A stretch of DNA of 64,000 bases from assembly GCF_035594765.1 (NCBI RefSeq), contig NC_085842.1, forward strand, positions 109,034,782 to 109,098,781, written 5' to 3'. How positions within the stretch are numbered: position 1 is the stretch's first letter; the number at the start of each line of letters is the position of its first letter. A program made the translations under genes and the position numbers. This document shows positions 31,035 to 52,627 of this stretch, in pieces. The notes beneath the pieces were generated by a model, which saw nothing but the letters and a program-made list of their open reading frames with translations, was not told where the DNA came from and searched no databases. This DNA comes from Anolis carolinensis. Lineage: Eukaryota.

Positions 31035-31169
31035 ATGTCTTTGCCAAAACTGCTGTGCATCTGCTGCTTCGCAGGAATTGTTCTTACAGCTCCAACATCA
31101 CCAAACAACTTCAGAAGAGAAATCTCATCATTTCAGATAACCATAAACAATTCGTGTAATGATGCAAAG
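31035..31169 (+). CDS. IL-4/IL-13-family cytokine A (IL13 syntenic position), exon 1: signal peptide + helix A
   Basis: TATAAATA at 30956, ATG 31035; MSLPKLLCICCFAGIVLTAPTSPNNFRREISSFQITINNSCNDAK|gtaaat; 135 nt, phase 0. Confidence 0.88.
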
Positions 31170-31629
31170 GTAAATCTAATATGTCATTTTGTTATGTATA
31201 TTGTTGATGTAATATTATGGCTGTTGTTTATGCTTATGCTGAGCACGTGGGAAATTGTGGACCATTTTTCACCTTAGCAATGTCCTCCTGATGCTTTAAT
31301 GTGCATTGATTTTCTAGAGATATGGCAGCAACGGGATTTGTATCCTAATACAAACAAGCACCCTGGGAAGAAATTATATGGGGGGGGGGGGGAGTGCTAT
31401 AATTTAAACATTTTTTTAAAAAAAGCTCTCTTGAAAAAGAACAGACGCCAAAGATACGAGACGTGAAACTGGATGATTCCAGAATTAAAAATTCTAATGT
31501 GCTGATTTGGCTGAATTGAGAGACATTCAAATGAAAATAGGACTCCCTGAAGACAGAGTGATTTTGAATCTGAATTCTCCCTAACATACATGAGTGATTT
31601 TGATTTTGGTGAAACACAGAGACCCATCA

Positions 31630-31842
31630 TGTGCATCTACACTGTAGAATTAATGCAGTTTGACAACACGTTGACTGCCATGGTTTGATGCTATTGGAGT
31701 TGTAGTTATACAAGATGTTTAGCCTTCTTTGCCAAAAAGTGCTAGTGTTTCATCAAACTACAAATCCAGGGGGTCCATAGCATTAAGACATGGAAATTGA
31801 AGTGGTGTCAGACTGCATTAATTCTACAGTGTAGAGGCACCC
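31630..31842. mobile_element. Palindromic MITE (second copy about 45119-45320)
   Basis: gtgcatctacactgtagaattaatgcag...ctgcattaattctacagtgtagaggcac inverted termini. Confidence 0.7.
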
Positions 31843-32005
31843 AAGACAGCATGCCTCCAAAACCTGACACACCCTCGAGTTTACATAAAATAGTTTAATA
31901 ACTGGCAACTCAAAATCAAATCCCACTGAATACTTTTATCAGAGTTCTGTAATTCCTGTGCTTTGTGGGAAAGATGCTGAATTAATATATGACACCCTGA
32001 GCTTT

Positions 32006-32385
32006 CATAGAATCATAGAATCATAGAATAGTAGAGTTGGAAGAGACCTCATGGGCCATCCAGTCTAACCCCCTGCCAAGAAGCAGGAAATCGCATTCAA
32101 AGCACCCCCGACAGATGGCCATCCAGCCTCTGCTTAAAAGCCTCCAAAGAAGGAGCCTCCACCACAGTCCGGGGGAGAGAGTTCCACTGTCGAACAGCTC
32201 TCCCAGTGAGGAAGTTCTTCCTGATGTTCAGGTGGAATCTCCTTTCCTGTAGTTTGAAGCCATTGTTCCGTGTCCTAGTCTGCAGGGCAGCAGAGAACAA
32301 GCTTGCTCCCTCCTCCGTATGACTTCCCCTCACATATTTGTACATGGCTATCATGTCTCCTCTCAGCCTTCTTTTCTGCAGGTTG
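32006..32385 (-). mobile_element. CR1 LINE 3' end in cytokine A intron 1
   Basis: ORF 32097-32354 RTRNNGFKLQERRFHLNIRKNFLT; (TTCTATGA)n tail. Confidence 0.9.
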
Positions 32386-33308
32386 AGAGGAGAAACTCTT
32401 TCTCCAGAGTTTGGTACCTTTTATAAGCACTTTTTTCCTGATTCCTCTTAAGATCAGGAATCAGAGAACTGTTTTGGTGACCAACATAAGTGTGATGTTT
32501 TGTGTTTGCTTGGAAAATGTTGTATATTCAAGTACTTCTATGGCTGTTCGCTCCTCACATCCCACCACCATGCATCTCATTCTGTGCTTTCAGTGCCAAC
32601 TATGCAGAAAACAAACGAGCCTCAAGCTGTAATGCTTTCATCATAACTCCCAGTCCCTTGTGCTTATCCTATATCTTGCTTCTTGCCTAGGAACACACAA
32701 GTATGACATAAACCATTTTTTAAACCAATTGCTTTCTCACATTTACAGACCTATAAAGGACTTGTAGGGGGAAACAACTCAGTCTAAATGATGCCCTTGC
32801 ACAAAATCTTTATTTGAAACATTAGGGGTTTCATACCCCCCTTTGGAAAGGAGGTATCATTGTTGTTGATGTTGTAGTTGTTGACTGTATTTTATTCGAA
32901 AGTTCCAATTGGTAATGGGCTCTTGCACACAATCACCTGGCACACAATCTCTGCACATATTTATCCAAAAGTGGACTGATGTCATTCCTTTAACAAAGCT
33001 ACAGTTCTTGCAATTTTCAACCAATTTCAACATACTGGTGGAAACATTTCTAGCCATTTATTAATTTTTGATGGAACCACAAAGATTTTGATTGCTTGGC
33101 AGAGATTCCAGTTTTGAACCTACAAAAATTGGGTAGTATCCAAATTTAGAAAATTATTTTCCAAATTGGGTTCAAGGCTGAATCTTCCATTCAGTATTTA
33201 ACTTGAGTAATAAAATATACTGTTTCATCAAGAAAGGTTTTTCTCATTCACAGAATATGTAAACAAAGACACTTTCCTTATCTGATCTGTCACTTTTTTT
33301 TTCCACAG

Positions 33309-33359
33309 CATCTGCCTTGCTGGAATGAGCCAGTAAGAAAAATCCATTTCAAAGAAGAT
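33309..33359 (+). CDS. Cytokine A exon 2
   Basis: T-tract+ccacag|CAT...GAT|gtaagt; 51 nt phase 0; HLPCWNEPVRKIHFKED resembles cytokine B exon 2 DVPCGNQRIREIKL. Confidence 0.85.
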
Positions 33360-34774
33360 GTAAGTGATATTTTTTGTGTAGACTTCAAGAATCAGTGCCT
33401 CTACTTTCTGTTTTCTTGAATGAAATTGAAGTCACAGCAGGAAAAAACCTGGGTCATTTCAGCTTGCTAACATGAAAAAGCTGGTGTTTTAGAAATCTTC
33501 AGTAACCTCCCAGTGCCACCAGTGACTACATTTTTACAAATCTGTCAACAAGCATAAACCATGAGGCATAATTAGCAGGGCATGTAAAGCTTTTTAAAAA
33601 CAGATTATTGTCTTATAACAGATCAGTGAGAGGCAGTACTGCAATTTGAAAATGTTTTCTAATGAATGAATGTATCTACTAAAAGTTTTTTATTAATATG
33701 TTGCAAATCATTGAGAAAAGCAAACATGATATTGTATAAGGAGATAACGTAGGTGACTTAGCTTTAGAATCTAAAGTTAACCACATTGCCATTATTCACA
33801 TGCAAAGTGTTACTCTTTCTTTTCATTTTTTAAAATCTACAGTGAGAAACATTGTCTGTATTTCCTTCAGGCAGGTATTCATTACTACCTGTTCTTCATA
33901 ATGATTATAGTTAATGCTGGAAGTTCTTACATAGCCCCCAACAAAAATGTGGCAGATGTTATTTCCCCAAACTGTGCAATTTGTTTCCAGCCAATCCAGT
34001 CGGAAATATTCCTGGGAAATGTACTTTCCATCTTCTATTGCCACTACCGTGAGGAGGTCTCTCTCCGTCACTGGACCTCTTCACAGGGACTATAGGACTG
34101 ACTCCTTAGAGCCTTAAAGGTTTCAAACATGATCCACTTTACGTAATCCACTATATGCAATCCAACTAAATGGAATTCTGCTAAGCACATTCTCATTCAC
34201 ATAGCACATTCTTATACATAATGAATAATTTGATCCACTTTATCAGAACCGCAGATATATTTAAATAGAAGATATCTATCATCTTCAAAAAAATTCTGAC
34301 ATGCTTCCCCCAACTTCATTTAATTTGTAGTATGCCTTACAGTCATTTCTGACCTATGGCGACCCTCAGGCAGATCTGTCAGTGTGTTTAGTTCAAAATT
34401 AATAAGATTTTCCTGGTTGTCAGAGATTCAAATCCTGGTCTATAGGGTCCTAGGCCCCTTCTACACTGCAAAGTAGATAATCCAGACTATCTGATTTGAA
34501 CTGGTTTATATGAGTCTACATTGCCATATAATCCAGTTCAAAGCAGATAATCTGTATTTTATTTGGCAGTGTAGAAGGGCCCCTAATTCAATGCCCAAAC
34601 CACTGCAGCAGTGGTGCAACAACTTGTGACCCTCCAGGTATTTTGGACTTCTGCTCCCAGAATTCCCGGCCACTGGACAAGCTGAGAAGGCCTTCTGGGA
34701 GTTGGAGTCCCAAACACCTGGTGGGCTACAGGTTGTGCATTACTGTACTACACCATGCTCTCATTCATTTAATT

Positions 34775-34909
34775 CAGTGGTTCTCAACCTATGGGTCCCC
34801 AGGTGTTTTGACCTACAACTCGCAGAAATCCCAGCCAGTTTACCAGCTGTTGGGATTTCTGGGAGTTGAAGGCCAAAACATCTAGGGACCCACAGGTTGA
34901 GAACCACTA
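34775..34909. mobile_element. hAT MITE in cytokine A intron 2
   Basis: TIR CAGTGGTTCTCAACCT, 8-bp TSD ATTTAATT. Confidence 0.85.
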
Positions 34910-35135
34910 ATTTAATTTAATACAGAAACATTACCTTGGGATTAACGCAAATTACACTCCCATCATGTCTTACCATTGATGATATCAATAAGGATTGAGG
35001 AGAGTTGAAGATCAACATTTGGAGGGCTTTCCATTTTTCATCGCTTCTAGAGTCAAACCTAAATGAATATTGTTTGCAATGTGTATTAAACAAGAAGTGG
35101 TCATGTTGTCTTTTATTTCCAACTTTTCTTAACAG

Positions 35136-35255
35136 TGCAACCAAACATACTATCAAAATATATTCCGCCAAATCAAAGCTAATCTGAATCAGACTACATG
35201 CAAGACTATTTTTTCAAAAGCTGTAATTGCACCTGTGCTGCTTGGTAACACTTCA
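35136..35255 (+). CDS. Cytokine A exon 3 (helices B, C)
   Basis: ttttcttaacag|TGC...TCA|gtaagt; 120 nt phase 0; CNQTYYQNIFRQIKANLNQTTCKTIFSKAVIAPVLLGNTS; resembles cytokine B exon 3. Confidence 0.85.
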
Positions 35256-35614
35256 GTAAGTATCAGTGATGGTTATCGATACTGTTTTTATTCCAAAACT
35301 GTGGGAAGGGGTGCTAACATAAGGCTTATTATTTTAAAACGACTTAAACAATATACTTTGTTCAATGCAAGCATATAGTGGGCCCTTGATATCCACTAGG
35401 GTTTGGTCCCAGGGTGGACATACACAACCCATTGGTATAAAATTGCATGGCTGCTCAAGTCCCATTATATATATATACAGTGGTGTAGTAAATGCTGTCC
35501 CTTATATAAAATAGCAAAATCAAAGCATGCTTAGAACTTTTTTGTGTGTAATTGGTGTCTACTTAGTGAAGGCACAGATAGATATTGCCTTAAGACGGAA
35601 GAGGCATCTGTGGC

Positions 35615-35902
35615 CAGGGCTGTAGCCAAGGGGGGGGGGGGGGGGTTGGGGTTCAAACCTCCCCCCCCCCCCGAAAATTTTTAGGTTTTTTTTTAAAAAA
35701 CTGATTTACTCATGAATTTTAACTAGTTAACCAAATTCCCCTAAGTGTCCACTGAAGTTTATCTGTCTTGAGTGTGGACTGAAGTTTATCAATGGAGCCT
35801 GATTTCTAAATTATTTTGTGTTATGGAACTATTCTTCATGATTCGCTAAAAAAAAGTTTCACCCCCCCCCCCCCCCGAATTTTTTTTCTGGCTCTGACCC
35901 TG
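35615..35902. mobile_element. hAT-type MITE with poly-G/poly-C tracts in cytokine A intron 3
   Basis: CAGGG...CCCTG termini, 8-bp TSD TCTGTGGC. Confidence 0.75.
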
Positions 35903-36650
35903 TCTGTGGCTGGTTTGAAGGCCACTTTTTGCTCAGAGACTCTCTGAGAGCTACATGGACTCCTGAAAAATGAAACAAATTACCCCAAAGTGTCTCATTC
36001 CCAAAAAGAAGTATGTTAATCTGATTTTCAAAAAGAAATATGTTAATCTTAAACAGTACAAAATATTTCTGCAACCTACTTGGAAGGCAAACTGTAATCC
36101 CTGGAAGCTTCTAGAAGCAGCAATGTACTCGTTTTTTGCCAGAAAAAAATCAATTGAGGGATTATGGAATTATTGAGAGCCACAGATATGTCTCTGGAGC
36201 CCTCCTGTGGTCCCAATGCCCCAGTTTGCCTGGGCTTGGCCTTTAGGGAGCGTCAGGCAAAATCAAAGAGTCAATATGCACTAGTAAATGGTCAATAAAC
36301 AGATATAAAATATAAAGTTATATTGAATGAAGTACAATCAGTACAGAATTTACAATGTAATGTTAATGTTCCATACATCAAAATGAATATATAACTGAAC
36401 AATGTTTGCTCTATACATACATTTTCACTTGTTAAATCAGTCAGTTGAAACTGAAGAGCATGTCTGTAACTAAGGTTTGTGCAATCATCAGAAATGCTAA
36501 ACAATTTTTGTGAATTTACTCTCATGGGTGTCTTTTTTGAGGGCAGATGGTTTTGAACAAAAAGGGGGTGTATTGTCATGTTCATATGGTTTTTTTCCTG
36601 TTTAGTAGAGCTTAACAAGATTCTCCTTTCTTCTTCTTCTTCTTCTCAAG

Positions 36651-36758
36651 GTTCCTCACAGTTTCTCACAATCTCCTGCCACTACTCTGAAAGTCTTCTG
36701 TACAAAAGTTCAATATTATGTTGGATACCTAAAGAACGAATGTTCCAATCAGTTGTGA
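36651..36758 (+). CDS. Cytokine A exon 4 (helix D, stop)
   Basis: (TTC)n tract+ctcaag|GTT...TGA; 108 nt; VPHSFSQSPATTLKVFCTKVQYYVGYLKNECSNQL*; TLKxFC...YV..L.N.C shared with cytokine B. Confidence 0.87.
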   Translation, partial: VPHSFSQSPATTLKVFCTKVQYYVGYLKNECSNQL

Positions 36759-37839
36759 AACAAACGCCCAACAACTGAGTAAGAGCAGGAGCAATGAAGG
36801 ACCTTCCCCCCACCCACCCCAAAAGAGATAACTGACAGTTTTAAAAACACCATCACCTCATCATTTTTGTTGTTTGGGAAAGATGTCATCAAAAGAAAGA
36901 ATGCAATCATTGATTTAGTACTCTACAGATATGTGCCATGAAGTTGTCTGTTTGCCTGGGTGATCAGCCCACCCCCTTTTTGTGGCACATGGGTCATGCA
37001 AAGAAAGCATGCACAAGTATGTGCGCACTGAATCCCATGGTTGCTCTTTACCCATTCATCTATCACAACATCACATCCACCAGTTGGTGCTAAAATTCTT
37101 CCCAAATCGGGTGGGTCTGAAAAAGTAAAGGGTAGAGCTATACGCCACTCCTGCACAAGGTTGGCATGCAGCTTCTATCTGGATCTGATACCAAGAATGC
37201 AGATAAACATGTATAGCAAATTTCCATAGTGGACCCTTTCATGTGGCAAAGTTATAGTACTATGATTCCATCTTAATTGGCATGGCTGTCTCCTATGAAA
37301 TCTTGGTTTTGGGAAGTGCTAGAGCTTTCTAGCTGAGGCTTCTGGAGGCCCCTCCCTAAACTGGACATTCCCAAGATCCCATAGGATGTTTGCCCAGGCA
37401 GTTAACCTGGAATGATAGTGCTATAATTGTGGGGTGTGAGAGAGCCATGGTAAGTGCGATGGCACTCTTCAGATAGGAAGATGGGGAGTCAGGGTATTCT
37501 CATATACATCCCTTTTAAAGTGATTCTTAATAGTAGAGCCCACCTCTCAGCTGCAGCCATGGTTTAGTAAAAATCAAATAGGAATCCTAATTTGTTCCAG
37601 GATTAATTTTTTCATTTTTTTTCTGATCAATTGTAAGGCAAGTCTTTGTACCAGGTGTTAATGTAATATGATGTCTGTCAGTTTCTTTATGTCATTCTAG
37701 CCTAGATATTTTACATAAATCACATGCGGATGTGTGATTAAATGGTGGTCCGTAGATATACATCCATTTGTAACAACTGAGCAATACAGGATAGGGTTGG
37801 TGTATTTCTCATCACCCCTTAGCAGTTCTATGGCATAGG

Positions 37840-37958
37840 TTTATTTATTGATTTCTATTCTATTTAATATTTAATATTTATAAAATATTATATATTCTAA
37901 ATATGTTCTGATCTTGATCAGGAAGCAAGCCAGTGTTTAAGTGTAACACTGCAATAAA
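37840..37958 (+). terminator. Cytokine A 3'UTR AU-rich elements and candidate poly(A) signal
   Basis: ATTTA cluster 37840-37880, AATAAA 37953-37958. Confidence 0.5.
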
Positions 37959-39300
37959 GCTAAGCATCTTTCATGTCTCATACAACTTGGGTTTGGGGTA
38001 GTATTCACCTGCCCAAGCTTTGAGTTGCCATGTGGAGAGAAAACTGTCCTTCCAGCCTCTAGGACACTCTTTCAGGGGAGGGGAGACTTTGCCCATGTCC
38101 AGGTGCCTTTTTCCAGGCTTGCAAAGATTTTTTTTATTCAAGCTAAACCTGATACAAGAAAGTTTTAAATGGATATGTTGAAATATTATTTATTATTATT
38201 AGTTTTTTAAGTATTTAACTTATGTCTTAATATCATAAGTAGTTTAAAAGTATTTTAATATTTTAACTGGATGTGTTTATATTACTGATTGTGTTGTATT
38301 CTGGCTTGGGTCTCTGTTTTGGGAGACAGGCAAGATACAAATAAAAAAGAGTATCTCTCATGAAGAGGGAATTACAACCATTGACAATCACAACTTTGAC
38401 TCAGTTACATTTAACATTTTTCTTGTTATGTTATTTTGAGGTTGATCTTGTTTTTTTTTCTGATTGCCTTCATAATTTAGTATGACCCTGTAACTGAATT
38501 CATGTTTGTGTTCTGATTGCATTGATATGTATTTAAATTTATATGGAACCCTTATGTTTTTATATCAAATTGTTAATGAGAGCGGCCAATTTCATGTGTG
38601 ACATAATTTCTCTGGCATACAGATTTCTATGTACTTTTGCTTGTTTTAAATAAAGTTTGAGAAATCAGACTGTTATTTTCTTAGTATAATGACTGCATTC
38701 ACAAATGCTGTTCCCAACTTACGTTGCTGCAAAAAATCCAAAACAAAACATATTGGTATTATTGCAGAGCCCTTAAAAGCATTTTCATGCACCATATTCT
38801 CCTCCTCTCTAGCCCATGTGCTGTTATCTTTAGCTGAACTTTCTTTTAAAGGTATTTTTTCTGAGTGAAATAGTCAACAGCAAGTTTAAGAAGCTCCAAC
38901 TGTCCCACAATCTTTTCTAGAAACAACAGTGTGGGTTGTAAGAAGACATTGGTTCATCACAAGGTCCGGGGTAATTGTTTGCCCTGTATGTTGTTGTTTT
39001 TTTCAGTAATGAGGGAATTCTCTTCTGACAGTGTCTGTTTCATTTGACTCCAAGGACACTCCTTCATGTTGTTGTCAAAAGCTACTGATAGTGGCTCATT
39101 AGCTTTATCATGGAGAATTAAGGGAGTAGCATTGTTGTCCGTAGTAATTTCAAACTGGGTGTTTAAGTTAGGTATACTCACAGTTTCCTCCCTGAAGAGT
39201 TTGTCAGTTTTCAGTTGTTTAGAAACCTTATGGTGTGTTGTTGACTTGAGGCTAGTCCTATTGTGTTTTCTGTTCTCCATTTGAAGGAGAGGGAGTAGAA

Positions 39301-39615: not shown

Positions 39616-41000
39616 ATAGGAAAAATAAAAACACTGGAGCCCATTAAATCAGGCCTTATTATTTTGATGCTATCTTGCATTTCTCTCAATTGATATATGA
39701 TTTATATAGGATTTTAATGGTGTCTTTTATATTGTATTTAATAATCTGGTTTTCCTTTGCCTTATGTGTGAAAGACCCATCATCTAAGCATCAAATAAAA
39801 CTTGACTTGACTTGAAACATATTGGTAAGATGAAACTACCCTGGATGTATGTGTATGTTGTCTATGAGAACTCTAGGAGGTGGATACCAAGAAAAGGCAA
39901 CACTATTATTTTTTCTGACACAAAAGCAGTATTTAAATATTAGTAAACCAAATGAAGATTGATAAGTTCAGTGATAGCACTGCCACTTTTGATGGAATGA
40001 ACCATACTGGACAGTAAGTCTTGAGGAGGGGAAAGTGTGCATGTATGACACAAAATTCATGCATTGATCAGGAATCTTTTCAGTAGGTTGTGATAACCTC
40101 TGACATCTCAGTCTAAGGACAATTGGACCTGCAAAGAAATAAGAGCATTTCCCCATCTTTGTCCTTTTTCACCAGAGTCGTCTCCATACATTTCAACCTG
40201 GTCAAAAGACACTGATATGCCTTTTATCCTACAAAAGGAATTTGATTGAAGTCTACAACTGAAATGTCTATAGGATAAAAACTGAAAGGGAAAAAGAGGC
40301 TGCCTGCTTTTTTTTCTCCACAGCTGTGAGCTGGATATTGGACTAAAATAATAGAATATTAGAGTTGGAAGAGACCAAAAGGGCCTTCTAGTACAAGATT
40401 CTCCCATTCAGGAATATATAACCTAGGACCTTATCAGACGGGTAGGGATAGAGCGGGGAACAGCGGAAGACAGCGGAGAGAACTGTCAGGCTCTGTTCCC
40501 TCTCATTAGGGTCTGTCTTCTTTCTTTCTAAGTCATTTCCCTTTCTTTCCCCACTTCCTCTTCACCTCCTCTTCCCTTTTTCAGTGACGAGTCAGGTAAA
40601 CATTGTTGCCAAATGAAAATGGCAACACCCCTCTCGATTCAAGTAACTTCCCGGTAAACAGAATGAGAGTCTAGCCTAGCTGACAATGGACCCCAAATGG
40701 CAAGACCTTTGGCTGAATTGCACACCTCTAGTGGTGAACTGTACATCTCCCATTTGAGGATCAGTCAAAGTATTAGCCACAAGGTGTCACCAAAAGACTA
40801 GGCACAAAGTGAAAAATTGCCCACATCAACTAGAATGTAATGATGATGTGAAATTTTGTAATCTGCATTGGTGGCAGATTTTCCCATATCAGAGAAATAG
40901 CCAGTCTTCAAGGTTTATATGTTTTATACTTTTTACCATTTATTGTATGTCAACATATGGCAACCCCATGAATTTTCATAGGGTTGTTTAAGGCAAGAAC

Positions 41001-41046
<46 letters not shown>

Positions 41047-41594: not shown

Positions 41595-41639
<45 letters not shown>

Positions 41640-41790
41640 GATCTGCCAACTGCAAAAGGCCACCCTGCTGGGATCTGCGCGCATCATCTGAAAATACATC
41701 ACACAGTCCTAGACACTTGGGAAGTGTTCGACTTGTGATTCTTTGATACGAAATCCAGCATATCTATCTTGTTTGCTGTGTCATAATAAA
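41050..41790 (+). mobile_element. Dong/R4-clade non-LTR retrotransposon 3' end in (TAA)n
   Basis: ORF 41123-41506 ILWDFRIQTDK..NTPDITVV..IIDVAIP (restriction-like endonuclease PD..D); (TAA)n on both sides; duplicated 3' end. Confidence 0.85.
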
Positions 41791-41803: not shown

Positions 41804-41853
<50 letters not shown>

Positions 41854-42089: not shown

Positions 42090-44370
42090 CAACAGGTATG
42101 TCAAGCCAAACTGAGGACATGGACGATGTCTTTCTAGAACAGATAATCTCACATTCACAAAAGAGAGATTTAATAGTAACGGGAGATTTTAACTATCCTG
42201 ATATTTGTTGGAAGACAAACTCTGCCAAGGATATCAGGTCCCACAAATGCCTCACTTAACGTTACAGCAATTCCATTATCCAGAAGCTGAAAGAGGCAAC
42301 AAGGAGATAAGCTATTTTACATCTGATCCTGTACTAGAGGGGAAGTCAAAAAGAGTCAGATATACACGCTAGACTTGGAGAAAGCTGATTTCAGTAAACT
42401 TAGGAAAAAACTGAGCGTAATCCCAATGTCAGGAACACTAACAAAGAAAGGAGTTCATGATTGATGGTGATACAGAGATTAAAACATTTGGGGGTTTCTC
42501 CCAGAAAAGGAGACCCGTGCTAAATCCAGCAAGGGGGGTTGCGAAACACCTGGCAAGCTTACAAGAAGCAAATAAATGTTTTCCCTATTCTCAATTAGAG
42601 TCTCACCCAGGTTGGAAGCAGGGGTCACCGAGTTTAATTCTGGTCCAGCTGGAACAGGATGATGGCAGCAATATGATGCAAGAAGAACCGACATACCATT
42701 ACAGAGAAAAAGGCACTTTTTATACTTTACCATTTTGAATTTTCTGCCTCCTGCCTTCGCGCTGGTTGGTCAGGGGAGTCCCTGACAGGGAGAATCTGAT
42801 GGGGAGAATCACAGGATCCAGCATCCCTGTGGTTTGGGGAGACAAACCCAATCAGTCTTATGACCGTTTGAAAGGGCTTCGACCCCTCTTCACGTTTCCA
42901 TAAGGGAATAAGTAGGAATCCCAGAATTTCCCCATTGGCCCAGGCAAGCAAAGGGCTTACTGGAGTCACTCTGAGACTAGGAGACGGTGCAAGGAATACA
43001 TGGGTTCATGCAGGGAATGGGCAGAGGGGCAGAAAAGACATTTCAGATACCTGTGCTCATTCATAAAAAGGCTAAACTCATTCATAAAAAACTGATTGGA
43101 GTGTGTGGAGGCGAATCGGGGCCACTATGGCAAAACCGGAGGAGATCCTCAGCTTGGGACAAATTTTATGGCGATTTTTTGGTTATAGAGAACTGTCTGC
43201 AAAAATGTTCCTTTTGCAGGCGGGAAAGTGAAAGCAAGTTGGAAACAGTTTTCTTGCTTTGGTCAATATGTAACAGAAGTCAATGGAGCTTCAATGAAGA
43301 GAGAGTGCCTGAGGTTTTTCTGCAGAAACAATGTATCTATGTGGCTGAGGCTCTTCTGAGAGGGGGGGAAAGCCTGTGGAACTCCTGGCAGTGATCAGCT
43401 GTATGTCAGAGCAATGTGAGTGTGGGGGCTTGCGTGTTCGACATCAGTGGGCGTTTCTGAAAAGTGAGATATTGGACGCACAGTTTTAAACAGTTCCAAT
43501 AAGGAGGAAAAATAGGAGATGATCTAAGGATCTTTCAATTCAACTTAGATTTAAAAGGGACATATACAAGAAATGGAATAAGAGAGAAATCACCAAAGAG
43601 AAATTCAGAGGAATAGCTAGCCTTTGTAGGGATCAATTTAGAGAAACCAAAGCACAGAAGGACCTCATGCTTGCTAAAAAAAGTTAAAAACAATTAAAAG
43701 GGCTTTAAAAAGTTTTGTCCAGAGCAAAAAGGAAGAACAAGGAAATGGTAGGGCTGATGCATACAGGCGTTGGCAAAATGCTAGCAGGAGACAAGGAAAA
43801 GGTAGAACTACTCAACACCTTACGTGCCTGGATGCAGCAGAGAATGCAGCAGAGTAAAGGCAACATAGAAGAGGTAAAGGGGCAGTACAGGAATATCTGG
43901 CTAATCCAAATGAATTCAAGTTTCCAGGGCCACATGAACGCCATCCAAGAGTAGTAAAATAATTGGCAAAAGTAATTTCAGAACCATTGGCAATTATCTT
44001 TGAGAACAAAAGTCCCAGTAGACTGGTGGAGGGCAACTGTTGTCCCTATATTCAAGAAGAGATAAAGGGGGGACCCAAACAGTTACCGTCCAGAAAGCTT
44101 GTTTTCTGCTGCTCTAGAAAGGACACAGAGTAAGGAATGCAAATTTCAGGGGGGGGGGGGGAAGAGTCCACTTAAACATTAGGAAGAATGTCCAGACAAT
44201 AAGAGCTGTAGTGGAATATGCTTCCTCAGAGTGTGGTGAAATCTCCTTCTCTGGAGGTTTTTAAGCAGAGGCTGTATGGTCATCTGTCAGGGGTGCTTTG
44301 ATTCTATGTTACTGAATGGCAGGGAGTTGGACTGGATGGCCCTTGTGGTCTCTTCCAACTCTGATTCTGT
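42090..44370 (+). mobile_element. Decayed CR1 LINE, interrupted by an LTR-like insertion
   Basis: GDFNYPDICW endonuclease motif near 42180, RT-region remnants 43450-44090, CR1 3' end near 44350. Confidence 0.75.
42468..43446. mobile_element. Probable solo LTR inserted in CR1
   Basis: TGAT...ATCA termini, 4-bp TSD ATGG/GTGG; CR1 sequence resumes on both sides. Confidence 0.55.
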
Positions 44371-44722
44371 GACAGTGGCAGAAACAGAGTTGCACATAGA
44401 GTAACATGGCATATTTGTGGAACTCCATTGGCTAACATATGTGTGTGTCCATTTTTAGATAGCCACTCTCTTCCCTTTGTGCTTTGTCTAAAACCTCTTT
44501 TTCAGGAGGAAGGAGAAGGAGCAACTGCTTGTGCTGCCATGGAAGAGAGACACATGATGGAGGCAATTCAGATGATGAAGATGTGGGCGGTGTGGGCATG
44601 AAACAAAAGCAATCTAATTTGCAACATGCAATACAAAGAAATCCCATGCTGGAATAAACAGACATTTTAACTCTTAAGGGAACTCTGCTTCTAATCATTC
44701 ACTTGCCAACCCACACTGTCGA

Positions 44723-44907
44723 CTGGGGCAAATTCTCAGAAGGCGTCTCTTTCTGTCATAAGAATCTCCTCCATTCAGTCATACAATCAGAATCATTTCT
44801 TTTCATAGTCTTAACAATTTTGGCATTTCAGCATCAGTGATAACATCTTTTCTTGTGCTCTTGCCTTAAGTAAATAATCTTTTCTATAACACTTTTTTCA
44901 TAATGCC
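44723..44907. promoter_or_regulatory. Candidate distal enhancer upstream of cytokine B
   Basis: Paralog of 26188-26368; GAS + TGATAA..ATCT double GATA. Confidence 0.55.
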
Positions 44908-46032
44908 ATTCAAATTTATTCACATTTAATGATATGATATTTCCAGTAATAATCTCTGCTGAAATCAATATCTTTCAGCCCAACAGGCCATTTTTCCTAA
45001 AGCAGTACATGTATTACAGATTTGTTTTTTAAAAAATAATAATACTTTTTGTTTGCTGAACATCTGTTTTGAAGATAATGAATCGCAATCATGTTGGAAG
45101 TTTAGGGAGAGCAATATAGGTGCATCTACACTATATAATTAATGCAGTTTGGCACCAGTTTAACTGCCATAGCTCAATGCTATGGGAGATGTAGTTTTAC
45201 AAGGTCTTTAGCTTTCTCTGTCAAAGGGAAATTGGTGTCTCACCAAACTACCAATTCCAGGATTCCATAGCATTGAGCCATGGTGTCAAAGTGCATTAAC
45301 TGTACAGTGCAGATGCACCTTTGATTCCTCAACACTAAAATCTCTGACCAAAGTAAAGCCCCAGGATTTCAAAGGACAGACCATGCTTATGCTTATTCTT
45401 GGTCACTGCAAAGAGTTGTAATCCCTTTATCACTCTACGGAAACCTTTTAAATCCAAGTTCAGTTGAAAGATCCTTAGATCTGGTTTCTTTAGACATCTC
45501 CTATTTTCCCTCCTCATTGGAACTATTCAAAACTGTCCTCAATTGACCACAGACCCCCTGAAGCTTCCCACCAGCCATTCATACTGGGTTCATGCACCCA
45601 GATGACAAGTCATGGCATTCCTACTATAACCACTGAAGGATCATAGCTGTTCTGGCTCCACTAGCACACACTTGCAGACCCAGCGAGGGAGGAAGCAATT
45701 AACCCAGAATTCAGAAATAACTTAGGCAAGGGCAGTATATCAACAGGGCTCAGCGTCTTTACCTGTGGGAGTCTGGTTTGCAGAAGGGTAGTCATGACCG
45801 GCCAGGTTTGGAAAAACAAGCAGCAACAGCAACCAGGATCTAGGAATCTAGGCAGTCCAGGGTTTAGAGTCACAAAAATATGACCTCCATCCAGCACCAA
45901 CTCGAGTTGTCTCTTAGATGGACTGAAACCAGCTGCTCCTAATCAGGATCACCTGATAAAATCTCTCTGTAACATGTTCAATATCTGGTTAATATTTATT
46001 GAAATTTCAGCTTGTCCAGAATGTTCCAGACA

Positions 46033-47985
46033 CTTACTTACTTAGGCGATCCCTCGTAGTTCGAGGATGATTGTCCTCCATCTGTGGGGTCTTGGGGGTG
46101 TGTCTGTAGGTGGCTGAAGAGACCTATTCTTGATCTGCATGTTCTACCACAGTGAGGACATCGGTTTCCAGGTGGAAGGCGGTCCCGGTCAGGGTTGGCT
46201 TGATGGGCCTTCCTCTTGGCACGTTTCTCCCTTAAGCCCTCCATTCATGCCTCTTTGAACTCCGCAGCACTAATGGTCACAGCTGACCTCCAATTAGAGC
46301 GCTCAAGGGCCAGGGCTTCCCAGTTCTCAGTGTCTATGCCACAGTTTTTAAGGTTGGCTTTAAGCCCATTTTAAAATCTCTTTTCCTGCCCACCAACATT
46401 ACGTTTCCCGTTCTTGAGTTGGGAGTAGAGTAGCTGCTTTGGGAGACGGTGATCGGGCATTCGGACAACATGGTCAGTCCAGCGGAGTTGATGGCGTAGG
46501 AGCATCGCTTCAATGCTGGTGGTATTTGCTTCCTCAAGCACGCTGACATTTGTCTGCCTGACTTCCCAAGAGATTTGCAGGTTTTTTCTGAGGCAACACT
46601 GATGTTGCCTAGGAGTTGAGTGTGACGTCTGTAGACCGTCCACGTTTCGCAGGCAGAGACCAGGGTTGGGACGACAATGGCTTTATAAACAAGCATCTTG
46701 GTATCTCTATGGATGTTCCGGTCATCAAACACTCTCTGCTTCAATGTGTTGTTGAAGGCTTTCATGGTCGGGATCACAGGGTTGTTGTATGTATTTCGGG
46801 CTGTATGGCCATGTTCCAGAAGTATTCTCTCCTGATGTTTCACCCACATCTAAGACAGGCATCCTCAGAGGTTGTGAAGAGAGAATACTTCTGGAACATG
46901 GCCATACAGCCCGGAATACATACAACAACTCTACTCTCTGCTTAATTCTGAAAAATGCTGCACTCGCAGAGCTCAGGCAGTGTTGTATTTCAGTGTCGAT
47001 GTTGACTTTTGTGAAGAGGTGGCTGCCAAGGTAGCAGAAATAGTCAACATTTTCTAATGTTACACCATTAAACTGTATTCCTGGCTTTGCAGAGGGATTA
47101 GCTGGTGCCTGTTGGAAGAGCACTTTGGTTTTCTCAATGTTCAATGAGAGGCCAAGCTTCTCGTATGCTTCTGCGAAGGTGTTTAGAGTGGCTTGTAAGT
47201 CTTCTTCTGAGTGCCCACAAACTACGTTGTCATCGGCATATTGGAGTTCTATAACAGATGTTGTGGTGTCCTTGGTTTTGGCTCTCAGTCTGCTGAGGTT
47301 AAATAGCTTGCCATCTGTCTGATAGATGATTTCCACACCAGTGGGAAGCTTCCCATCAACAAGGTGAAGTATCATAGCGATGAAGATGGAAAATAAGGTA
47401 GGGGCAATAACACATCCCTGCTTGACACCTGATTCCACCTTAAATGGGTCACTTTGGGAGCCGTTGTTGTCCAAGACTGTTGCCATCATGTCTTCATGAA
47501 GGAGCCGCAGGAGGTTCACAAATTTGTCAGGGCACCCGATTTTTTGGAGGATGGTCCAGAGAGCGCTGCGATTCACTGTGTTGAATGCCTTTGCAAGGTC
47601 AATGAATGCCATGTACAGAGGCTGATTTTGTTCCCTGCATTTTTTTTGGAGCTGTCGTGCAGTGAAGATCATGTCCACTGTTCCTCTGGAGGGGCGGAAG
47701 CCGTTCTGGGATTCTGGGAGGGTGTCTTCTGAAACAGGGAGAAGGCGGTTTGCAAGGATTCTTGCGAGAATTTTCCCAGCGGATGTTAGAAGGGAGATAC
47801 CGCGATAGTTCCCACAGTCTGTTCTATCCCCTTTCTTGAAAAGGGTGATGATGGTGGCATCCTTGAAGTCTGCTGGGACTTTCTCGGCCGCCCACACTTT
47901 TTCAATGAGCTGTTGGAGTTGTTGTATCAGCTCAGGTCCACCCTCTTTGAAGATTTCAGCAGGGATCCCATCAGGTCCGCTGTAT
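46033..47985 (-). mobile_element. RTE-clade LINE, 5'-truncated, RT domain largely open
   Basis: ORF 46725-47999: GPDGIPAE, NYRGISLL, FIDLAKAF, GVKQGC, YADD; (TAAG)n-like tail. Confidence 0.92.
46742..46932. mobile_element. Penelope pseudo-LTR inverted pair nested in RTE
   Basis: 11-bp TSD ACTCTCTGCTT (46731-46741 / 46933-46943); inverted arms. Confidence 0.8.
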
Positions 47986-48032
47986 TTGTTAATATCCAAT
48001 GTTAGCTACAGTTAACATGCAACACTTTTTTT

Positions 48033-48270
48033 TCATGTCAGGAGCGACTTGAGAAAATATAAGTCACTTCTGTTGTGATAAAATTGGCCATCTGTAAAGA
48101 CATTGCCTAGGGGACGCCCGGATGTTTTGGCATTTTTACCATCCTTGTGGAAGGCTTCTCTCATGTCCCCGCATGGAGCTGGAGCTGATAGAGGGAGCTC
48201 ATCTGTGATCAGCAATTCAACCTTCGATTCAGCAGTCCTGCCAGCACAAGGGTTTAACCCACTGTGCCAC
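48033..48270 (-). mobile_element. Sauria SINE
   Basis: tcatgtcaggagcgacttgagaaa...ggagctggagctgatagagggagctc. Confidence 0.8.
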
Positions 48271-48843
48271 TATGCAATGCTGATTCTGTATAAGCTCATG
48301 GGCTGGTTGCTGAAAAAATAATTTGTGTCTATGGAGTGCCCTTTTCCATTCCTAGTTTTTATGTTGTAGGGTTGAAAATTTCTTGATAGCCCCTTAATCT
48401 AGCACTTTGTTTTCTGATAATTAATCAACAGAAACAGCAAGAATTCAGTTATCGAGGTCAATGTAACTAAGGTAGTATATAAGAACGTAGGATGAGCCAT
48501 GGTGGAGAAAATTAATGGTTGGCTGAGTCTAGTATGGCTCATCTTATGTTCTTATATAGTGCCTCAGTCACATTAAACTTAGTAAGCAGAAATGCACTTT
48601 ATATCTACATCCTATGTGCATTCAGCCATATTGTGCTATATTGATTATATGGCTCTTTTAACTGATTCTACTTTGATAGAGGATTTATCCAGCTTATATA
48701 CCTGGTTTATGTAATGTTGTTATTGTCTTCATGCTGATGTATTTTATTTTATGTATTATATATTTTATGTATGGCATCTTTGTGTGCTATTTTGTAAGCC
48801 GCCCCGAGTTCCTATGGGAGATGGTGGCGGGATATAAATAAAG

Positions 48844-48898
<55 letters not shown>

Positions 48899-49339
48899 GA
48901 GTAATTACAGAATATAAGTCTGATGACCTGTAACATTGTATGCCTGTCTTTCTGTGCTTGTACATACAAGGCCTATATGCCTGCCTGAGTTTCTAGTAAA
49001 GTTGGGAGGTACAAGGTTGGCAGAACCCATTTAAATTAGTTTATGTGCCTACAACATGTCATGGTGGTGGTGATTGTGTTCATTTATGTAATTTCCGACT
49101 TATGGTGACCCCAAAGTGAATCCTATCATAGGGGTTTCTTGGCAAGATTTAGTCAGAGGAAAGTTCCCTTTGCCTTCCTCTGAGGCTGAGAGAATATGTG
49201 CTTATGTCTAATATTTACATAGAAAAATTCTTACTTGCCTAATGTTACTATTGTGTTGTAATTCCACACCAGATAAATCAATGCGTATAATTTTCAGCCA
49301 TGAGAAATATTGTTTGAAAATCCCCTTTTCTTAATGTCC

Positions 49340-49550
49340 CCATAATTTCCATTTTATCATTCATTTTCCATCTTATCATTTGGATATGTGGTTTTTGGGT
49401 TCTCTGAATAGGCAAATTCACAACTCATCTCTACATTTACGTCAGGTATTTATCTGTTTCCTCTGGTTATAAATAAGCAGCTTGCAAATAAATGACAAAG
49501 CAGTAAGGAGGACACCATTCATTGACCTGACCAATCCAAAGAACGAGATC
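49340..49550 (+). promoter_or_regulatory. Cytokine B proximal promoter / 5'UTR
   Basis: Alternating TTTCC (NFAT) and TTATC (GATA) 49346-49377, TGTGGT 49387, TTCTCTGAA (GAS) 49400, TTACGTCA 49437, TTATC, TTCCTCT, TATAAATA 49468. Confidence 0.72.
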
Positions 49551-49688
49551 ATGCTTTTGAAAGCAATCTTTGCCTTTTGTTTCTTGGCTCAAGGTATTTC
49601 TAAAATTGCAGCGCAACCAGTCAAGAAGTTTGAAAGGGAAGCACAAGAATTGGTGAAGATTGTGAATGCCACATGCACGGTGTTAAAG
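49551..49688 (+). CDS. IL-4/IL-13-family cytokine B (IL4 syntenic position), exon 1: signal peptide + helix A
   Basis: TATAAATA at 49468, ATG 49551; MLLKAIFAFCFLAQGISKIAAQPVKKFEREAQELVKIVNATCTVLK|gtaaga; 138 nt phase 0. Confidence 0.9.
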
Positions 49689-50535
49689 GTAAGAAGAGCA
49701 TCTTGCGTTTTAGGATCATGTTATTTTCTTTTTCAGTCAGAGTATTGCTTGCTTGACCAGGCTCAGTTGTGTATTGCTTTATGAAATATATAGTTTTAAT
49801 GTTATAAAAATGTTCATACCAAATGCACAGAACGAGTATGCCCAATTTGATGTTATTAATAAATGAATGTATTTCGGGGTGGGTGGGGGGTGGGCAATAT
49901 GTTTCATTTATTATCTTGCTGAAATCAAGATGTTGAATGAAACATGATTTATACTTTAAGAGATAATACATGAATAGAGTTTTAATTAACAGGCAAACCC
50001 TATTTTGTCTTATGGACCCCACCCCCTGTTTATAACATCTGGGGTTAATTTATAAACAGACGTATTGATTGAATTGATTTGGCATTTGATAGGAATGAAA
50101 GGTCAATTTAAACAGAAATAAGTAAGTAGAACAGAAATTTGAAATACTGAAAAATGTTTGCTTCAAACCAACATCAAAGCAATTTAACAATTTCAATGTA
50201 TCAGTCATACCTGTTTGGACATTAAGAAGTGCTAATGAATGAAATACCAAATCTTAGACCTTGCTTAGAAGAGTACACAAGGCAGATAAGTGTTGTGCAC
50301 AAGGCAGATAAGTGTTGTGAAAAACATTAGGGACAAGAAGACATCAGAGCTGGTGTGTCAACCCCCCAAATTCACAAAGGACATATCCACAGACAAAAGT
50401 TACCTTATGGTAGTAAGGCTATTATTTTTATCCGCTTCTCAACTAGATGAAAAGGTTACTAGACCTTCTCTTACAGAAAGTACAATTTAAAAAAAATCCC
50501 TTCCCTGAACTATAACTTTTTTTCCATTTGCACAG

Positions 50536-50610
50536 GATGTGCCTTGTGGGAATCAGAGAATAAGAGAAATCAAATTGGCACCTGCTATGAGATGGAACAA
50601 TAGAACACTG
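50536..50610 (+). CDS. Cytokine B exon 2
   Basis: ttttccatttgcacag|GAT...CTG|gtgagt; 75 nt phase 0; DVPCGNQRIREIKLAPAMRWNNRTL. Confidence 0.87.
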
Positions 50611-50750
50611 GTGAGTGATACATTCAAAAATTATATACAAGGGATAATATGCCTACAGAACATTTGTTCAGCCATTGAGACATCTAAGACTTATGAAGGT
50701 TAGCTTAGAAAATGATCATGCATGATTCAATTTGATTTTTCTTTAAACAG

Positions 50751-50873
50751 TGCGCTTCCTACAGCAATACATTCTGCCAAGTTAACCGTGCTCTGAAGGA
50801 ACTCAACCACGGCGAGTGCAGAAATGCGAACGTGACACAAATCCAGGGAGCTTTAAAACCCCTAAAAGGACAT
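50751..50873 (+). CDS. Cytokine B exon 3 (helices B, C)
   Basis: ctttaaacag|TGC...CAT|gtgagt; 123 nt phase 0; CASYSNTFCQVNRALKELNHGECRNANVTQIQGALKPLKGH; TFCQ resembles the IL-4 TFCR motif. Confidence 0.9.
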
Positions 50874-51064
50874 GTGAGTATCCTAATTAAAAACAACCCC
50901 ATTGCTGAAATACAAAACTTAAAGAGTTTAACCAAGAGGCATCTGGGGATTTGATGCATTTTACAACAAACCTTAGTACCACTTTCATTGTGTGCTAACA
51001 TTTGTTGAACACATGAAATATTCTTAATGTGTCACTTTAAGAACAGTGATAGATTCTTAAAGGG

Positions 51065-51725
51065 AAGGGCCGGGAGGGCTTTTGCACAATTAAAACTCGT
51101 GCACCAACTGCATCCGTACCTCTAAAAGTCTGATCTGGCCACAGTGGTCCACGCCTTAGTTACATCTTGGATAGATTACAGCAATGCACTCTACTTGGGG
51201 CTGCCTATGAAGACGGTTCAAAAACTGCAATTTGTGCAGAGAGCAGCTGCCCGATTTCTAAAAGCAGCTGACTACAGGGAGCATACTCCTCCCTTGTTAA
51301 AGCAGCTCCACTGGCTGCCTGTGAGTTTCAAGGCCCAATTAAAAGTGCAAGTTATCACCTATAAAGCCCTTTATGGTTCAGGCCTTTAGGTCCTCAGGAG
51401 TGGGGGCTTCTCACGGTCCCACCAAGATTGACTATTTTTAGTATGATGATGGACCTTTAGCCTTGTCAATATCTATTGGTTTTAACTGGTCTTGTCTCCA
51501 CGGTATAATATGTCTTAAACCCAGTACAATTTTTAACATATGCATTTATTTATTGCGATATTGTTTTTAAAGTTTTAAATGATTATTAGTTATATTATAT
51601 ATTATGTCTTTTTTTTTTTTTGCTTATGTATGTACAGTATTGGGATTTGATTTTGTGGTGAGCCGACCCAAGTCCTTGTGGAGAGGGGGCGGGATATAAA
51701 TAAAGTTTATTATTATTTATTATTT
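51065..51725 (+). mobile_element. L2 LINE 3' fragment in cytokine B intron 3
   Basis: VHALVTSWIDYSNALYLGLP..LQFVQRAAAR..LHWLPV; tail gggatataaataaagtttattattat. Confidence 0.85.
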
Positions 51726-52513
51726 GTTCAAAACTGTTTTCACATTGAAATGAATAAGAATTGAAATGGGTGGGTTTCAGCTTCATTGTTCTGCCTCCTT
51801 CCAAGAAGAAAATCTTGGTGCCTACTTGCTGAAGATGGAAATATATATTGCCCTATGGCATGTAAATTAAACCCACCCAGTCATTAGAATCAGTATGAAA
51901 CGACAAGACAACTGTGTTTTGGACATATATTTAAATCATTAAATGGTCAATCTATAAAGGGATTAAATAGAGTATAGACTATTCTTAGTATGATGATAGG
52001 CTTTTAACCTTTTGGCCTTTTAGCCTTGTTGGAAAGATCATGCATCAGATCTCAATAATCGTCATGTATGTCCTTTTTGTAAATTTGGTATTTTGAACTG
52101 TGAATATGAGCCCATAACAGTTTCAGTTGGATTCTTAATTTCCTGACAATATAGGAATAGTTATGAGGATCAGGAGAGGTTATCAGCCTGCCCTTGTGGC
52201 CACTTGTCCCTCTTCTGAATGGGGTGATGCTGGGGTGCAACTTTCACAAGCAGAAACAAAGCAGTTCTGTAGGGCTGCTCTGTTTCTTCTGGTGTCTCTT
52301 TATCTCGGTCAGGGTCACGTGATTTATCAACCACATTCATATCAGAGACAATCTTGTATTTCCTTATTTCAAGAGACACCAGACTTCCCTTTACATGAGA
52401 TGTGTCTAAAGATGGGAGACTGTGGTCCATGTTATTTTATTCCCATAACAGCTGGTAGGGAACCATTGAAGCTGAACAAAGATCACAGATCTGTTGTACT
52501 TTCTTGTTTACAG

Positions 52514-52627
52514 GTCAGCTGCCAGTCATCAAACCATCACATCGTCCACATCACTCTGAAGGCGTTCTGCCCCAGACTGCTCAATTATGTCCAGACATTG
52601 TACAACATATGTGCAAAACGATATTAA
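52514..52627 (+). CDS. Cytokine B exon 4 (helix D, stop)
   Basis: tttcttgtttacag|GTC...TAA; 114 nt; VSCQSSNHHIVHITLKAFCPRLLNYVQTLYNICAKRY*; aligns without gaps to IL-4 helix D (TLENFLERLKTIMREKYSKC, recalled). Confidence 0.9.
   Translation, partial: VSCQSSNHHIVHITLKAFCPRLLNYVQTLYNICAKRY

What the first reader, a model, noticed from the sequence alone, without database searches (positions are those of the whole stretch)
31035..52627. Cytokines A and B look like a sister pair rather than 1:1 IL13 and IL4 orthologs
Seen: A and B share features in every exon: F.RE and N.(S/T)C...K in exon 1, PC.N..(V/I)R.I in exon 2, exon-3-initial Cys and Y.N.F.Q, and TLK.FC....YV..L.N.C in exon 4. Promoter, 5'UTR and an upstream element are also alignable. 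Mammalian IL4 and IL13 do not, as I recall, share these extra cysteines. Inference: an independent tandem duplication (or conversion) of one IL-4/13 gene in this lineage, analogous to fish IL-4/13A/B.
Basis: partly seen in the sequence, partly recalled or inferred. Interest (0 to 1): 0.8.

Follow-up and report, generated by a model that had tools for sequence, protein, structure and literature searches.

The report
Old lizard IL-4/13 cytokine gene pair
Two unannotated four-exon genes just downstream of RAD50 encode a pair of IL-4/IL-13-type immune signalling proteins that really do share motifs in every exon. They split long ago, and the available tools could not show whether they are plain IL13 and IL4 counterparts or a separate lizard duplication.

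Summary
Gene A (31035-36758, 137 aa) and gene B (49551-52627, 149 aa) each have four coding exons with phase-0 AG/GT introns, and lie head to tail downstream of the last RAD50 exon. Every listed motif is present; one exon-4 spacing is off by one residue. The proteins are 25-28% identical (z = 10.5 against shuffles). Three non-coding blocks also align: a STAT/GATA module about 4.8 kb upstream, the promoter with 5'UTR, and the exon-2 acceptor.

The inference stays open.
- The split is old: dS is about 1.5, codon sharing is near chance, and introns do not align.
- By eye, several shared features, including two of the four extra cysteines, also occur in published fish IL-4/13 or chicken IL-13 sequences, so they look ancestral.
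- Only one cysteine pair (end of helix A plus the "FC" in helix D) and the local exon-2 and promoter similarity look special to this pair.
- No relative was retrieved by any exon-wise search, so no tree could be built.
- The joined proteins were not searched or folded.

The parts
789..17332 (+). 3' part of RAD50: several coding exons. The last one ends with the stop codon at about 17330-17332.
   Evidence: ORFs with RAD50 coiled-coil and C-terminal ATPase sequence. The signature motifs [21 protein letters not shown] and FYRIKK are found in order on the + strand at 11837, 15255, 17183 and 17249.
26188..26330 (+). Upstream module of A, about 4.85 kb 5' of the ATG. It holds an exact 19-mer containing TTCTCAGAA (a STAT-type palindrome), then GATA motifs.
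   Evidence: The 19-mer occurs only here and at 44723 in the window; local alignment z = 7.7.
30936..31034 (+). Promoter and 5'UTR of A: TTATC (GATA) and TTCCTCTG block, TATAAATA at 30956, and a 14-nt 5'UTR block at 31016-31029.
31035..31169 (+). A exon 1 (45 aa): signal peptide and helix A with F.RE and N.SC...K.
33309..33359 (+). A exon 2 (17 aa): PC.N..VR.I. It aligns at nucleotide level with B exon 2 and about 35 nt of upstream intron.
35136..35255 (+). A exon 3 (40 aa, 120 bp): initial Cys, Y.N.F.Q, second Cys.
36651..36758 (+). A exon 4 (35 aa plus stop): TLK.FC, five residues, YV..L.N.C.
37843..37958 (+). Likely end of the A 3'UTR: three ATTTA motifs and an AATAAA/ATTAAA-type signal at 37953.
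   Evidence: motif scan only.
44723..44885 (+). Upstream module of B, about 4.83 kb 5' of the ATG, in the A-B intergenic region. It carries the same 19-mer and GATA block as the A module.
49450..49550 (+). Promoter and 5'UTR of B: the same blocks as A, with TATAAATA at 49468 and the 14-nt block at 49532-49545.
49551..49688 (+). B exon 1 (46 aa).
50536..50610 (+). B exon 2 (25 aa).
50751..50873 (+). B exon 3 (41 aa, 123 bp): initial Cys, then the FC and EC cysteines.
52514..52627 (+). B exon 4 (37 aa plus stop): Cys as third residue, then the same helix-D motif as A.
52962..53152 (+). Likely B 3'UTR: ATTTA cluster and a poly(A) signal at 53147.
   Evidence: motif scan only.

Best explanation
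A and B are two intact, secreted, short-chain four-helix cytokines of the IL-4/13 family. They sit in the slots that IL13 (next to RAD50) and IL4 (further from it) occupy in mammals and chicken.

They are old tandem paralogues, most simply the lizard descendants of the same duplication that gave IL13 and IL4. Their likeness has three sources.
1. Family-wide ancestral features that B in particular has kept. These include the helix-A glutamate in F.RE that contacts IL-4R-alpha in IL-4 and IL-13, the N-x-S/T...K exon end, PC.N, F.Q...LN, TL..F, and a fish-type cysteine pair.
2. Regulatory modules kept by selection so that both genes respond to the same GATA/STAT/TATA programme.
3. One or two short patches (exon 2 with its acceptor, and the promoter with 5'UTR) with extra nucleotide identity, from splicing or regulatory constraint or from an old local conversion.

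Inferred disulfides:
- Exon-2 Cys to the mid-exon-3 Cys, in both A and B.
- The FC in exon 3 to the third residue of exon 4, in B only; A has lost both partners together.
- Exon-3-initial Cys to the C-terminal Cys, in both.
- A lineage-specific staple from the end of helix A to the start of helix D, in both.

Shown here: gene structure, synteny with RAD50, the motifs, the divergence level and the non-coding blocks. Inferred: fold, receptor use, disulfide pairing and orthology.
For: - RAD50's last exons lie on the same strand directly upstream, and the order is RAD50, A, B.
- Both genes have four coding exons with three phase-0 introns, the organisation Wang 2016 gives for all IL-4, IL-13 and IL-4/13 genes.
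- There is no third copy in the window.
- A and B are 25-28% identical. That is about the published IL-4 versus IL-13 range of 20-27% in birds and 20-23% in mammals.
- dS is about 1.5 and dN about 0.7. Same-codon use is 20/37 against 16.6 expected.
- Only four short colinear DNA matches exist between the two loci; everything else is interspersed repeats.
- By eye, B helix B matches gar IL-4/13 at 10 of 17 positions, whereas A and B match each other at only 5 of 14 there. B helix D matches the presumed chicken IL-13 at 8 of 16, against 7 of 16 for A versus B. The end of B resembles the end of carp IL-4/13A.
- B keeps cysteines at the four positions called universal in PMC12327624.
Against: - No relative of A or B was found, so orthology rests on position only.
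- A and B share two cysteines (exon 1 and helix D) that are absent from every outgroup sequence I could read. Under 1:1 orthology this needs a parallel gain, a conversion, or several losses.
- B has an IL-13-like exon 2 and no IL-4-type AB-loop motif.
- Exon 3 sizes (120 and 123 bp) fit neither the IL-13 range (105-114) nor the IL-4 range (126-177) of Wang 2016.
- Published trees do not resolve deep IL-4/IL-13 relations well even between birds and mammals.
- Expression and splicing were not shown: the laid contigs looked genomic.
Confidence: 0.55

Rival explanations
1. This is a true sister pair. The lepidosaur lineage lost one of the two amniote paralogues, or never had two, and re-duplicated the remaining IL-4/13-like gene in tandem early in its history. 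A and B would then be co-orthologous to one bird/mammal gene, or to both, as with fish IL-4/13A and B.
For: - The shared cysteine pair (end of helix A and the FC in helix D) is absent from the gar, carp, salmon and four tetrapod sequences.
- Both genes have PC.N..(V/I)R.I in exon 2, with the same one-residue offset from the chicken IL-13 form.
- Exon 3 is 120 and 123 bp, the 'undifferentiated' range.
- The duplicated unit includes the -4.8 kb module, the promoter and the 5'UTR.
- Identity of 28% is at or just above the top of the bird IL-4 versus IL-13 range.
Against: - It needs a loss plus a new duplication that recreates exactly the ancestral order and orientation.
- dS of about 1.5 and near-chance codon sharing push any such duplication back to roughly the age of the lineage itself, which leaves a narrow time window.
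- In helix B and helix D, A and B are no closer to each other than B is to gar IL-4/13 or the presumed chicken IL-13 (by eye).
- Most shared motifs are ancestral.
Confidence: 0.3
2. This is concerted evolution. A and B are IL13 and IL4 orthologues that exchanged sequence by gene conversion in several tracts (promoter/5'UTR, exon 1, exon 2, exon 4), long enough ago that synonymous sites have diverged again.
For: - Exon 2 stands out: third-position identity is 13/17 against about 0.37 elsewhere (P about 0.001).
- The match runs about 35 nt into the upstream intron, 54/73 identity, z = 13.8.
- The promoter and 5'UTR are 69% identical over 98 nt, with a 14/14 block.
Against: - The conserved non-coding DNA is in discrete blocks separated by diverged spacers. 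That pattern looks like selection on binding sites rather than a uniform tract.
- Exons 1, 3 and 4 show no excess synonymous identity.
- The shared novel cysteines have different codons in A and B.
- A tiny exon and its acceptor may be constrained by splicing signals.
Confidence: 0.12
3. One or both models are not functional cytokine genes, being chance ORF chains or decaying pseudogenes.
For: - No homologue was found.
- No Pfam hit was obtained exon by exon.
- No spliced read was seen.
Against: - There are eight exons with canonical splice sites, all phase 0, with intact frames.
- Signal peptides, TATA boxes and AU-rich 3'UTRs are present.
- The A-B similarity has z = 10.5, in the expected place beside RAD50.
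- dN/dS is about 0.5.
Confidence: 0.03

Closest known systems
IL13 and IL4 of mammals and chicken (RAD50-IL13-IL4-KIF3A Th2 cytokine locus)
   Same: - Position and orientation downstream of RAD50.
- Two tandem genes, each with four coding exons and phase-0 introns.
- Signal peptide and a helix-A acidic residue.
- An exon-2 cysteine paired, by analogy, with a cysteine after helix B.
- GATA- and STAT-type sites near both genes.
- About 25% identity between the two paralogues.
   Different: - No exon gives a Pfam or PDB hit to IL4 or IL13.
- Both genes carry four cysteines beyond the conserved set.
- A lacks the second conserved disulfide.
- Exon 3 sizes fall between the published IL-13 and IL-4 ranges.
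- B lacks the IL-4 AB-loop motif (human sequence recalled, chicken).
- The promoters, 5'UTRs and an upstream module of the two genes are alignable with each other.
Spotted gar IL-4/13 (single, undifferentiated gene) and teleost IL-4/13A/B
   Same: - Same locus and gene structure.
- Exon 3 in the 120-129 bp range.
- A cysteine a few residues before the FC of helix B.
- A CD-loop cysteine and a cysteine near the end of helix D.
- B helix B matches gar at 10 of 17 positions, by eye.
   Different: - The fish genes lack the exon-2 cysteine and the helix-A/helix-D pair.
- Teleost A and B copies lie on different chromosomes after a whole-genome duplication, whereas these two genes are in tandem.
Elephant shark and frog tandem IL-4/13 copies
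   Same: Tandem duplicates of an IL-4/13-type gene within the RAD50-KIF3A interval that cannot be assigned to IL-4 or IL-13 (PMC9465101, PMC4690019).
   Different: These are outside amniotes. For a lizard, the default expectation is inheritance of the amniote IL13/IL4 pair.

Membership tests
IL-4/13 family (short-chain type I cytokines of the Th2 locus) | Gene lies between RAD50 and KIF3A. | tested here: inconclusive
   The RAD50 3' exons lie directly upstream on the same strand. KIF3A was not recognised within the window; 53-64 kb is mostly retroelement ORFs.
IL-4/13 family (short-chain type I cytokines of the Th2 locus) | Four coding exons separated by three phase-0 introns. | tested here: met
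   for both genes. The criterion comes from Wang 2016.
IL-4/13 family (short-chain type I cytokines of the Th2 locus) | Significant sequence match to the IL4 or IL13 families or to solved IL-4 or IL-13 chains. | tested here: not met
   Exon-wise Pfam and PDB searches gave no such hit. The joined proteins could not be submitted, so the test is weaker than a full-length one.
IL-4/13 family (short-chain type I cytokines of the Th2 locus) | Two conserved disulfides (four conserved cysteines). | tested here: inconclusive
   B has cysteines at all four expected places. A has them at two only. Positions were judged by eye against and against the recalled human sequences; the pairing was not tested.
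IL-4/13 family (short-chain type I cytokines of the Th2 locus) | Four-helix up-up-down-down fold. | not testable with these tools
   The spliced proteins have no reference, so they were not folded.
IL-4 proper (orthologue of bird/mammal IL4), for B | Groups with IL-4 in a tree. | not testable with these tools
   No other IL-4 or IL-13 sequence could be fetched.
IL-4 proper (orthologue of bird/mammal IL4), for B | Exon 3 of 126-177 bp. | tested here: not met
   B exon 3 is 123 bp.
IL-4 proper (orthologue of bird/mammal IL4), for B | It is the second gene of the pair, further from RAD50. | tested here: met
IL-13 proper (orthologue of bird/mammal IL13), for A | It is the gene next to RAD50. | tested here: met
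IL-13 proper (orthologue of bird/mammal IL13), for A | Exon 3 of 105-114 bp. | tested here: not met
   A exon 3 is 120 bp.
Lineage-specific sister duplicates (as fish IL-4/13A/B or shark tandem copies) | A and B are closer to each other than either is to any outgroup IL-4 or IL-13. | tested here: inconclusive
   No tree was possible. By eye, A-B similarity in helix B and helix D does not exceed B-gar or B-presumed chicken IL-13 similarity. One shared cysteine pair, however, is exclusive to A and B.
Lineage-specific sister duplicates (as fish IL-4/13A/B or shark tandem copies) | Divergence younger than the amniote split. | tested here: not met
   dS is about 1.5, codon sharing is near chance, and no intron alignment remains. 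This excludes a young event but not an early lepidosaur one.

The most novel reading that the evidence does not exclude
Squamates do not carry 1:1 IL4 and IL13. An early lepidosaur lost, or overwrote, one amniote paralogue and re-duplicated an undifferentiated, IL-13-like IL-4/13 gene. The two-cytokine type-2 system would then have arisen independently in lizards, with its own helix-A-to-helix-D disulfide and with duplicated STAT/GATA control modules.
Probability: 0.3. Interest if true: 0.7.

Novelty: new member of a known kind. Interest (0 to 1): 0.45.

Why it matters
Reviews state that the timing of the IL4/IL13 duplication is unknown and that reptile and amphibian data are needed (PMC9465101). 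Wang 2016 says clear IL-4 or IL-13 orthologues are missing outside mammals and birds.

No paper in the searched library describes the squamate genes, and the protein collections held no relative. This locus gives explicit gene models for a lizard pair. The models carry testable characters:
- four extra cysteines;
- loss of a conserved disulfide in A;
- duplicated regulatory modules.

With these, the duplication could be dated once the same interval is annotated in tuatara, geckos, snakes, turtles and crocodilians. The models also give reagents for studying type-2 immunity in reptiles.

Tried and rejected
- **Word-index protein searches, exon by exon.** I used the surrounding stop-free ORF as the reference so that full-length proteins were within the length filter. 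A exon 1, B exon 1 and B exon 4 gave no candidates.
- **Exhaustive profile search.** The exon-4 A+B profile returned only two long, unrelated proteins.
- **Exon-wise Pfam.** No IL4 or IL13 hit.
- **Exon-wise PDB searches.** Seven searches, singly or as A+B profiles, gave no IL-4 or IL-13 hit.
- **ESM Atlas look-alikes for both exon 4s.** No usable hit.
- **Sequencing runs.** All holders carry one coded organism and none is on record as RNA. Laying four possible RNA runs on the A locus showed unspliced, genomic-looking contigs and repeats. There was no splice joint, so expression is neither shown nor excluded.
- **tblastn of both models against the whole window.** No third copy or pseudogene.
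- **Literature.** Eight full-text searches found no paper on squamate IL-4 or IL-13. The supplement of PMC12327624 lists accessions only.
- **Recent whole-gene conversion.** Rejected because of codon usage.
- **Left out.** The joined 137-aa and 149-aa proteins have no reference, so they were not sent to any database search, family scan or structure prediction. They were used only in local scripts, built from window.fa.
Full report
**What is there**

The window carries the 3' end of RAD50 on the + strand. The motifs [21 protein letters not shown] and FYRIKK lie in order at 11.8, 15.3 and 17.2 kb, and the stop codon is near 17,330.

Two cytokine-sized genes follow on the same strand.
- Gene A has coding exons 31035-31169, 33309-33359, 35136-35255 and 36651-36758, giving 137 aa.
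- Gene B has coding exons 49551-49688, 50536-50610, 50751-50873 and 52514-52627, giving 149 aa.

All six introns are AG/GT and phase 0. Each gene has:
- a hydrophobic N-terminal signal;
- a TATAAATA about 80 nt before the ATG;
- ATTTA clusters with a poly(A) signal downstream.

Four coding exons with three phase-0 introns, placed beside RAD50, is the organisation that Wang et al. 2016 give for IL-4, IL-13 and IL-4/13 genes of all jawed vertebrates (PMC4905449). A tblastn search of both models against the window found no third copy.

Notes by other agents of this scan call the genome an Anolis lizard. I did not test that.

**The observation**

The only slip is that five residues, not four, separate FC from YV in exon 4.

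Exon-wise global alignments score z = 6.4, 4.3, 2.3 and 5.7 above shuffles. The full-length proteins share 42 identities in 150 columns, z = 10.5.

It gives only four colinear, non-repeat matches:

| Block | A locus | B locus | Support |
|---|---|---|---|
| Upstream module, two matches | 26188-26330 | 44723-44885 | Exact 19-mer with a TTC-N3-GAA palindrome, then GATA motifs. The 19-mer is unique in the window; z = 7.7. |
| Promoter plus 5'UTR | 30936-31029 | 49450-49545 | 68/98 identity, z = 7.4. A 14/14 block sits just before each ATG and is unique in the window. |
| Exon 2 plus about 35 nt of upstream intron | 33276-33344 | 50499-50571 | 54/73 identity, z = 13.8. |

All other matches are interspersed repeats.

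**How old is the pair?**

- Introns and intergenic DNA do not align.
- On aligned codons, dN is about 0.7 and dS about 1.5.
- Among 37 identical residues with degenerate codons, 20 use the same codon, against 16.6 expected from pooled usage.
- The two cysteines that look special to this pair use TGT in A and TGC in B, at both positions.

There is therefore no sign of a recent duplication or of recent whole-gene conversion.

Identity of 25-28% is about what Wang 2016 reports between IL-4 and IL-13: 20-27% in birds and 20-23% in mammals.

Exon 2 is the exception. Its third-position identity is 13/17, against about 0.37 in the other exons (P about 0.001). This could be an old local conversion, or a nucleotide-level constraint on a very small exon and its acceptor.

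**Comparison with other species**

This is where the work fell short.
- Three word-index searches found no candidate.
- The one exhaustive search, with the exon-4 profile, returned two unrelated long proteins.
- Pfam, seven PDB searches and the Atlas gave nothing.

The joined proteins were not searched or folded, and no tree could be made. The full-text library holds no paper on squamate IL-4 or IL-13. One review says reptile data are needed to date the duplication (PMC9465101).

The only outgroup sequences I could read are those printed in supplement Fig S10 of Wang 2016. That text is machine-read, and four of the sequences have lost their labels. I take two of them to be chicken IL-4 and IL-13. 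I compared them by eye only. These comparisons are leads, not tests.

They suggest that much of what A and B share is ancestral.
- Labelled gar IL-4/13 has a cysteine five residues before FFCQ, followed by ALK.LNH.E. B matches this stretch at 10 of 17 positions and A at 6 of 14, whereas A and B match each other at only 5 of 14.
- Gar, carp and salmon also have a CD-loop cysteine and a cysteine near the end of helix D. Carp IL-4/13A ends much as B does.
- The presumed chicken IL-13 has VPCND in the AB loop. Its helix D matches B at 8 of 16 positions, against 7 of 16 for A versus B and 3 of 16 for A versus chicken.
- The helix-A glutamate and the N-x-S/T...K exon end are also in gar and, from recalled sequences, in human IL-13.

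The exon-3-initial and C-terminal cysteines are therefore probably a retained fish-type pair, not a novelty.

Four points do remain exclusive to A and B.
- The cysteine four residues before the end of exon 1.
- The cysteine after the Phe of helix D.
- The same one-residue offset in PC.N.
- B lacks the AB-loop motif shared by chicken IL-4 and (as recalled) human IL-4.

Exon 3 is 120 bp in A and 123 bp in B. This falls between the published IL-13 range (105-114 bp) and the IL-4 range (126-177 bp), inside the range given for undifferentiated IL-4/13 genes (120-129 bp).

**How it most likely works (inferred)**

Both products are secreted four-helix cytokines that signal through IL-4R-alpha-containing receptors. 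The Glu of F.RE corresponds to the helix-A acidic contact of IL-4 and IL-13.

The cysteine bookkeeping is self-consistent.
- B has eight mature cysteines: the four conserved ones plus four extra.
- A has six. It lacks both partners of one conserved disulfide (the FC in exon 3 and the third residue of exon 4), which supports the idea that those two pair in B.
- In an up-up-down-down bundle, the end of helix A lies next to the start of helix D. The start of helix B lies next to the end of helix D. The four extra cysteines can therefore form two staples.

The shared GATA/TATA promoter blocks and the STAT/GATA modules 4.8 kb upstream suggest co-regulation by a type-2 programme.

Expression was not shown. 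All runs holding the locus carry one coded organism, and the laid contigs read through splice sites like genomic DNA.

**Verdict**

The genes are real-looking new members of the IL-4/13 family with an unusual cysteine framework. The sister-pair inference is neither established nor excluded.

| Reading | Probability |
|---|---|
| Old positional IL13 and IL4 orthologues, with retained ancestral features and local homogenisation | 0.55 |
| Early lineage-specific re-duplication | 0.30 |
| Old multi-tract conversion | 0.12 |
| One or both models not functional genes | 0.03 |

A recent event is excluded. The decisive step is to annotate the same interval in other reptiles and run a topology test.

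Noticed in passing
33276-33344 and 50499-50571: Exon 2 and about 35 nt of the intron before it are far more alike at nucleotide level than the rest of the two genes. Third-position identity is 13/17, against about 0.37 elsewhere. This is either an old micro-conversion or splicing constraint on a tiny exon. Mammalian IL-4 is known to skip exon 2.
   Followed up: partly
31631-31841 and 45120-45319: A repeat of about 210 bp matches in both orientations, so it is palindromic and MITE-like. One copy lies in A intron 1 and one lies upstream of B. It is a repeat, not part of the gene duplication.
   Followed up: no
46725-47999 (-): A 424-aa reverse-transcriptase-like ORF of a LINE lies between the B upstream module and the B promoter. 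The near-equal 4.85 and 4.83 kb spacing of the two modules from their genes is therefore probably coincidence.
   Followed up: no
56891-59486 (-): A run of long ORFs (182-262 aa) looks like a retroelement downstream of B. No KIF3A exon was recognised in 53-64 kb.
   Followed up: no
41000-41045, 41596-41640, 41805-41841, 48793-48860: Long trinucleotide (AAT/ATT-type) microsatellites lie in the A-B intergenic region and just upstream of B.
   Followed up: no
49492-49506: A four-codon mini-ORF (ATG to TAA) lies between the B TATA box and the main ATG. It probably sits at or before the transcription start.
   Followed up: no
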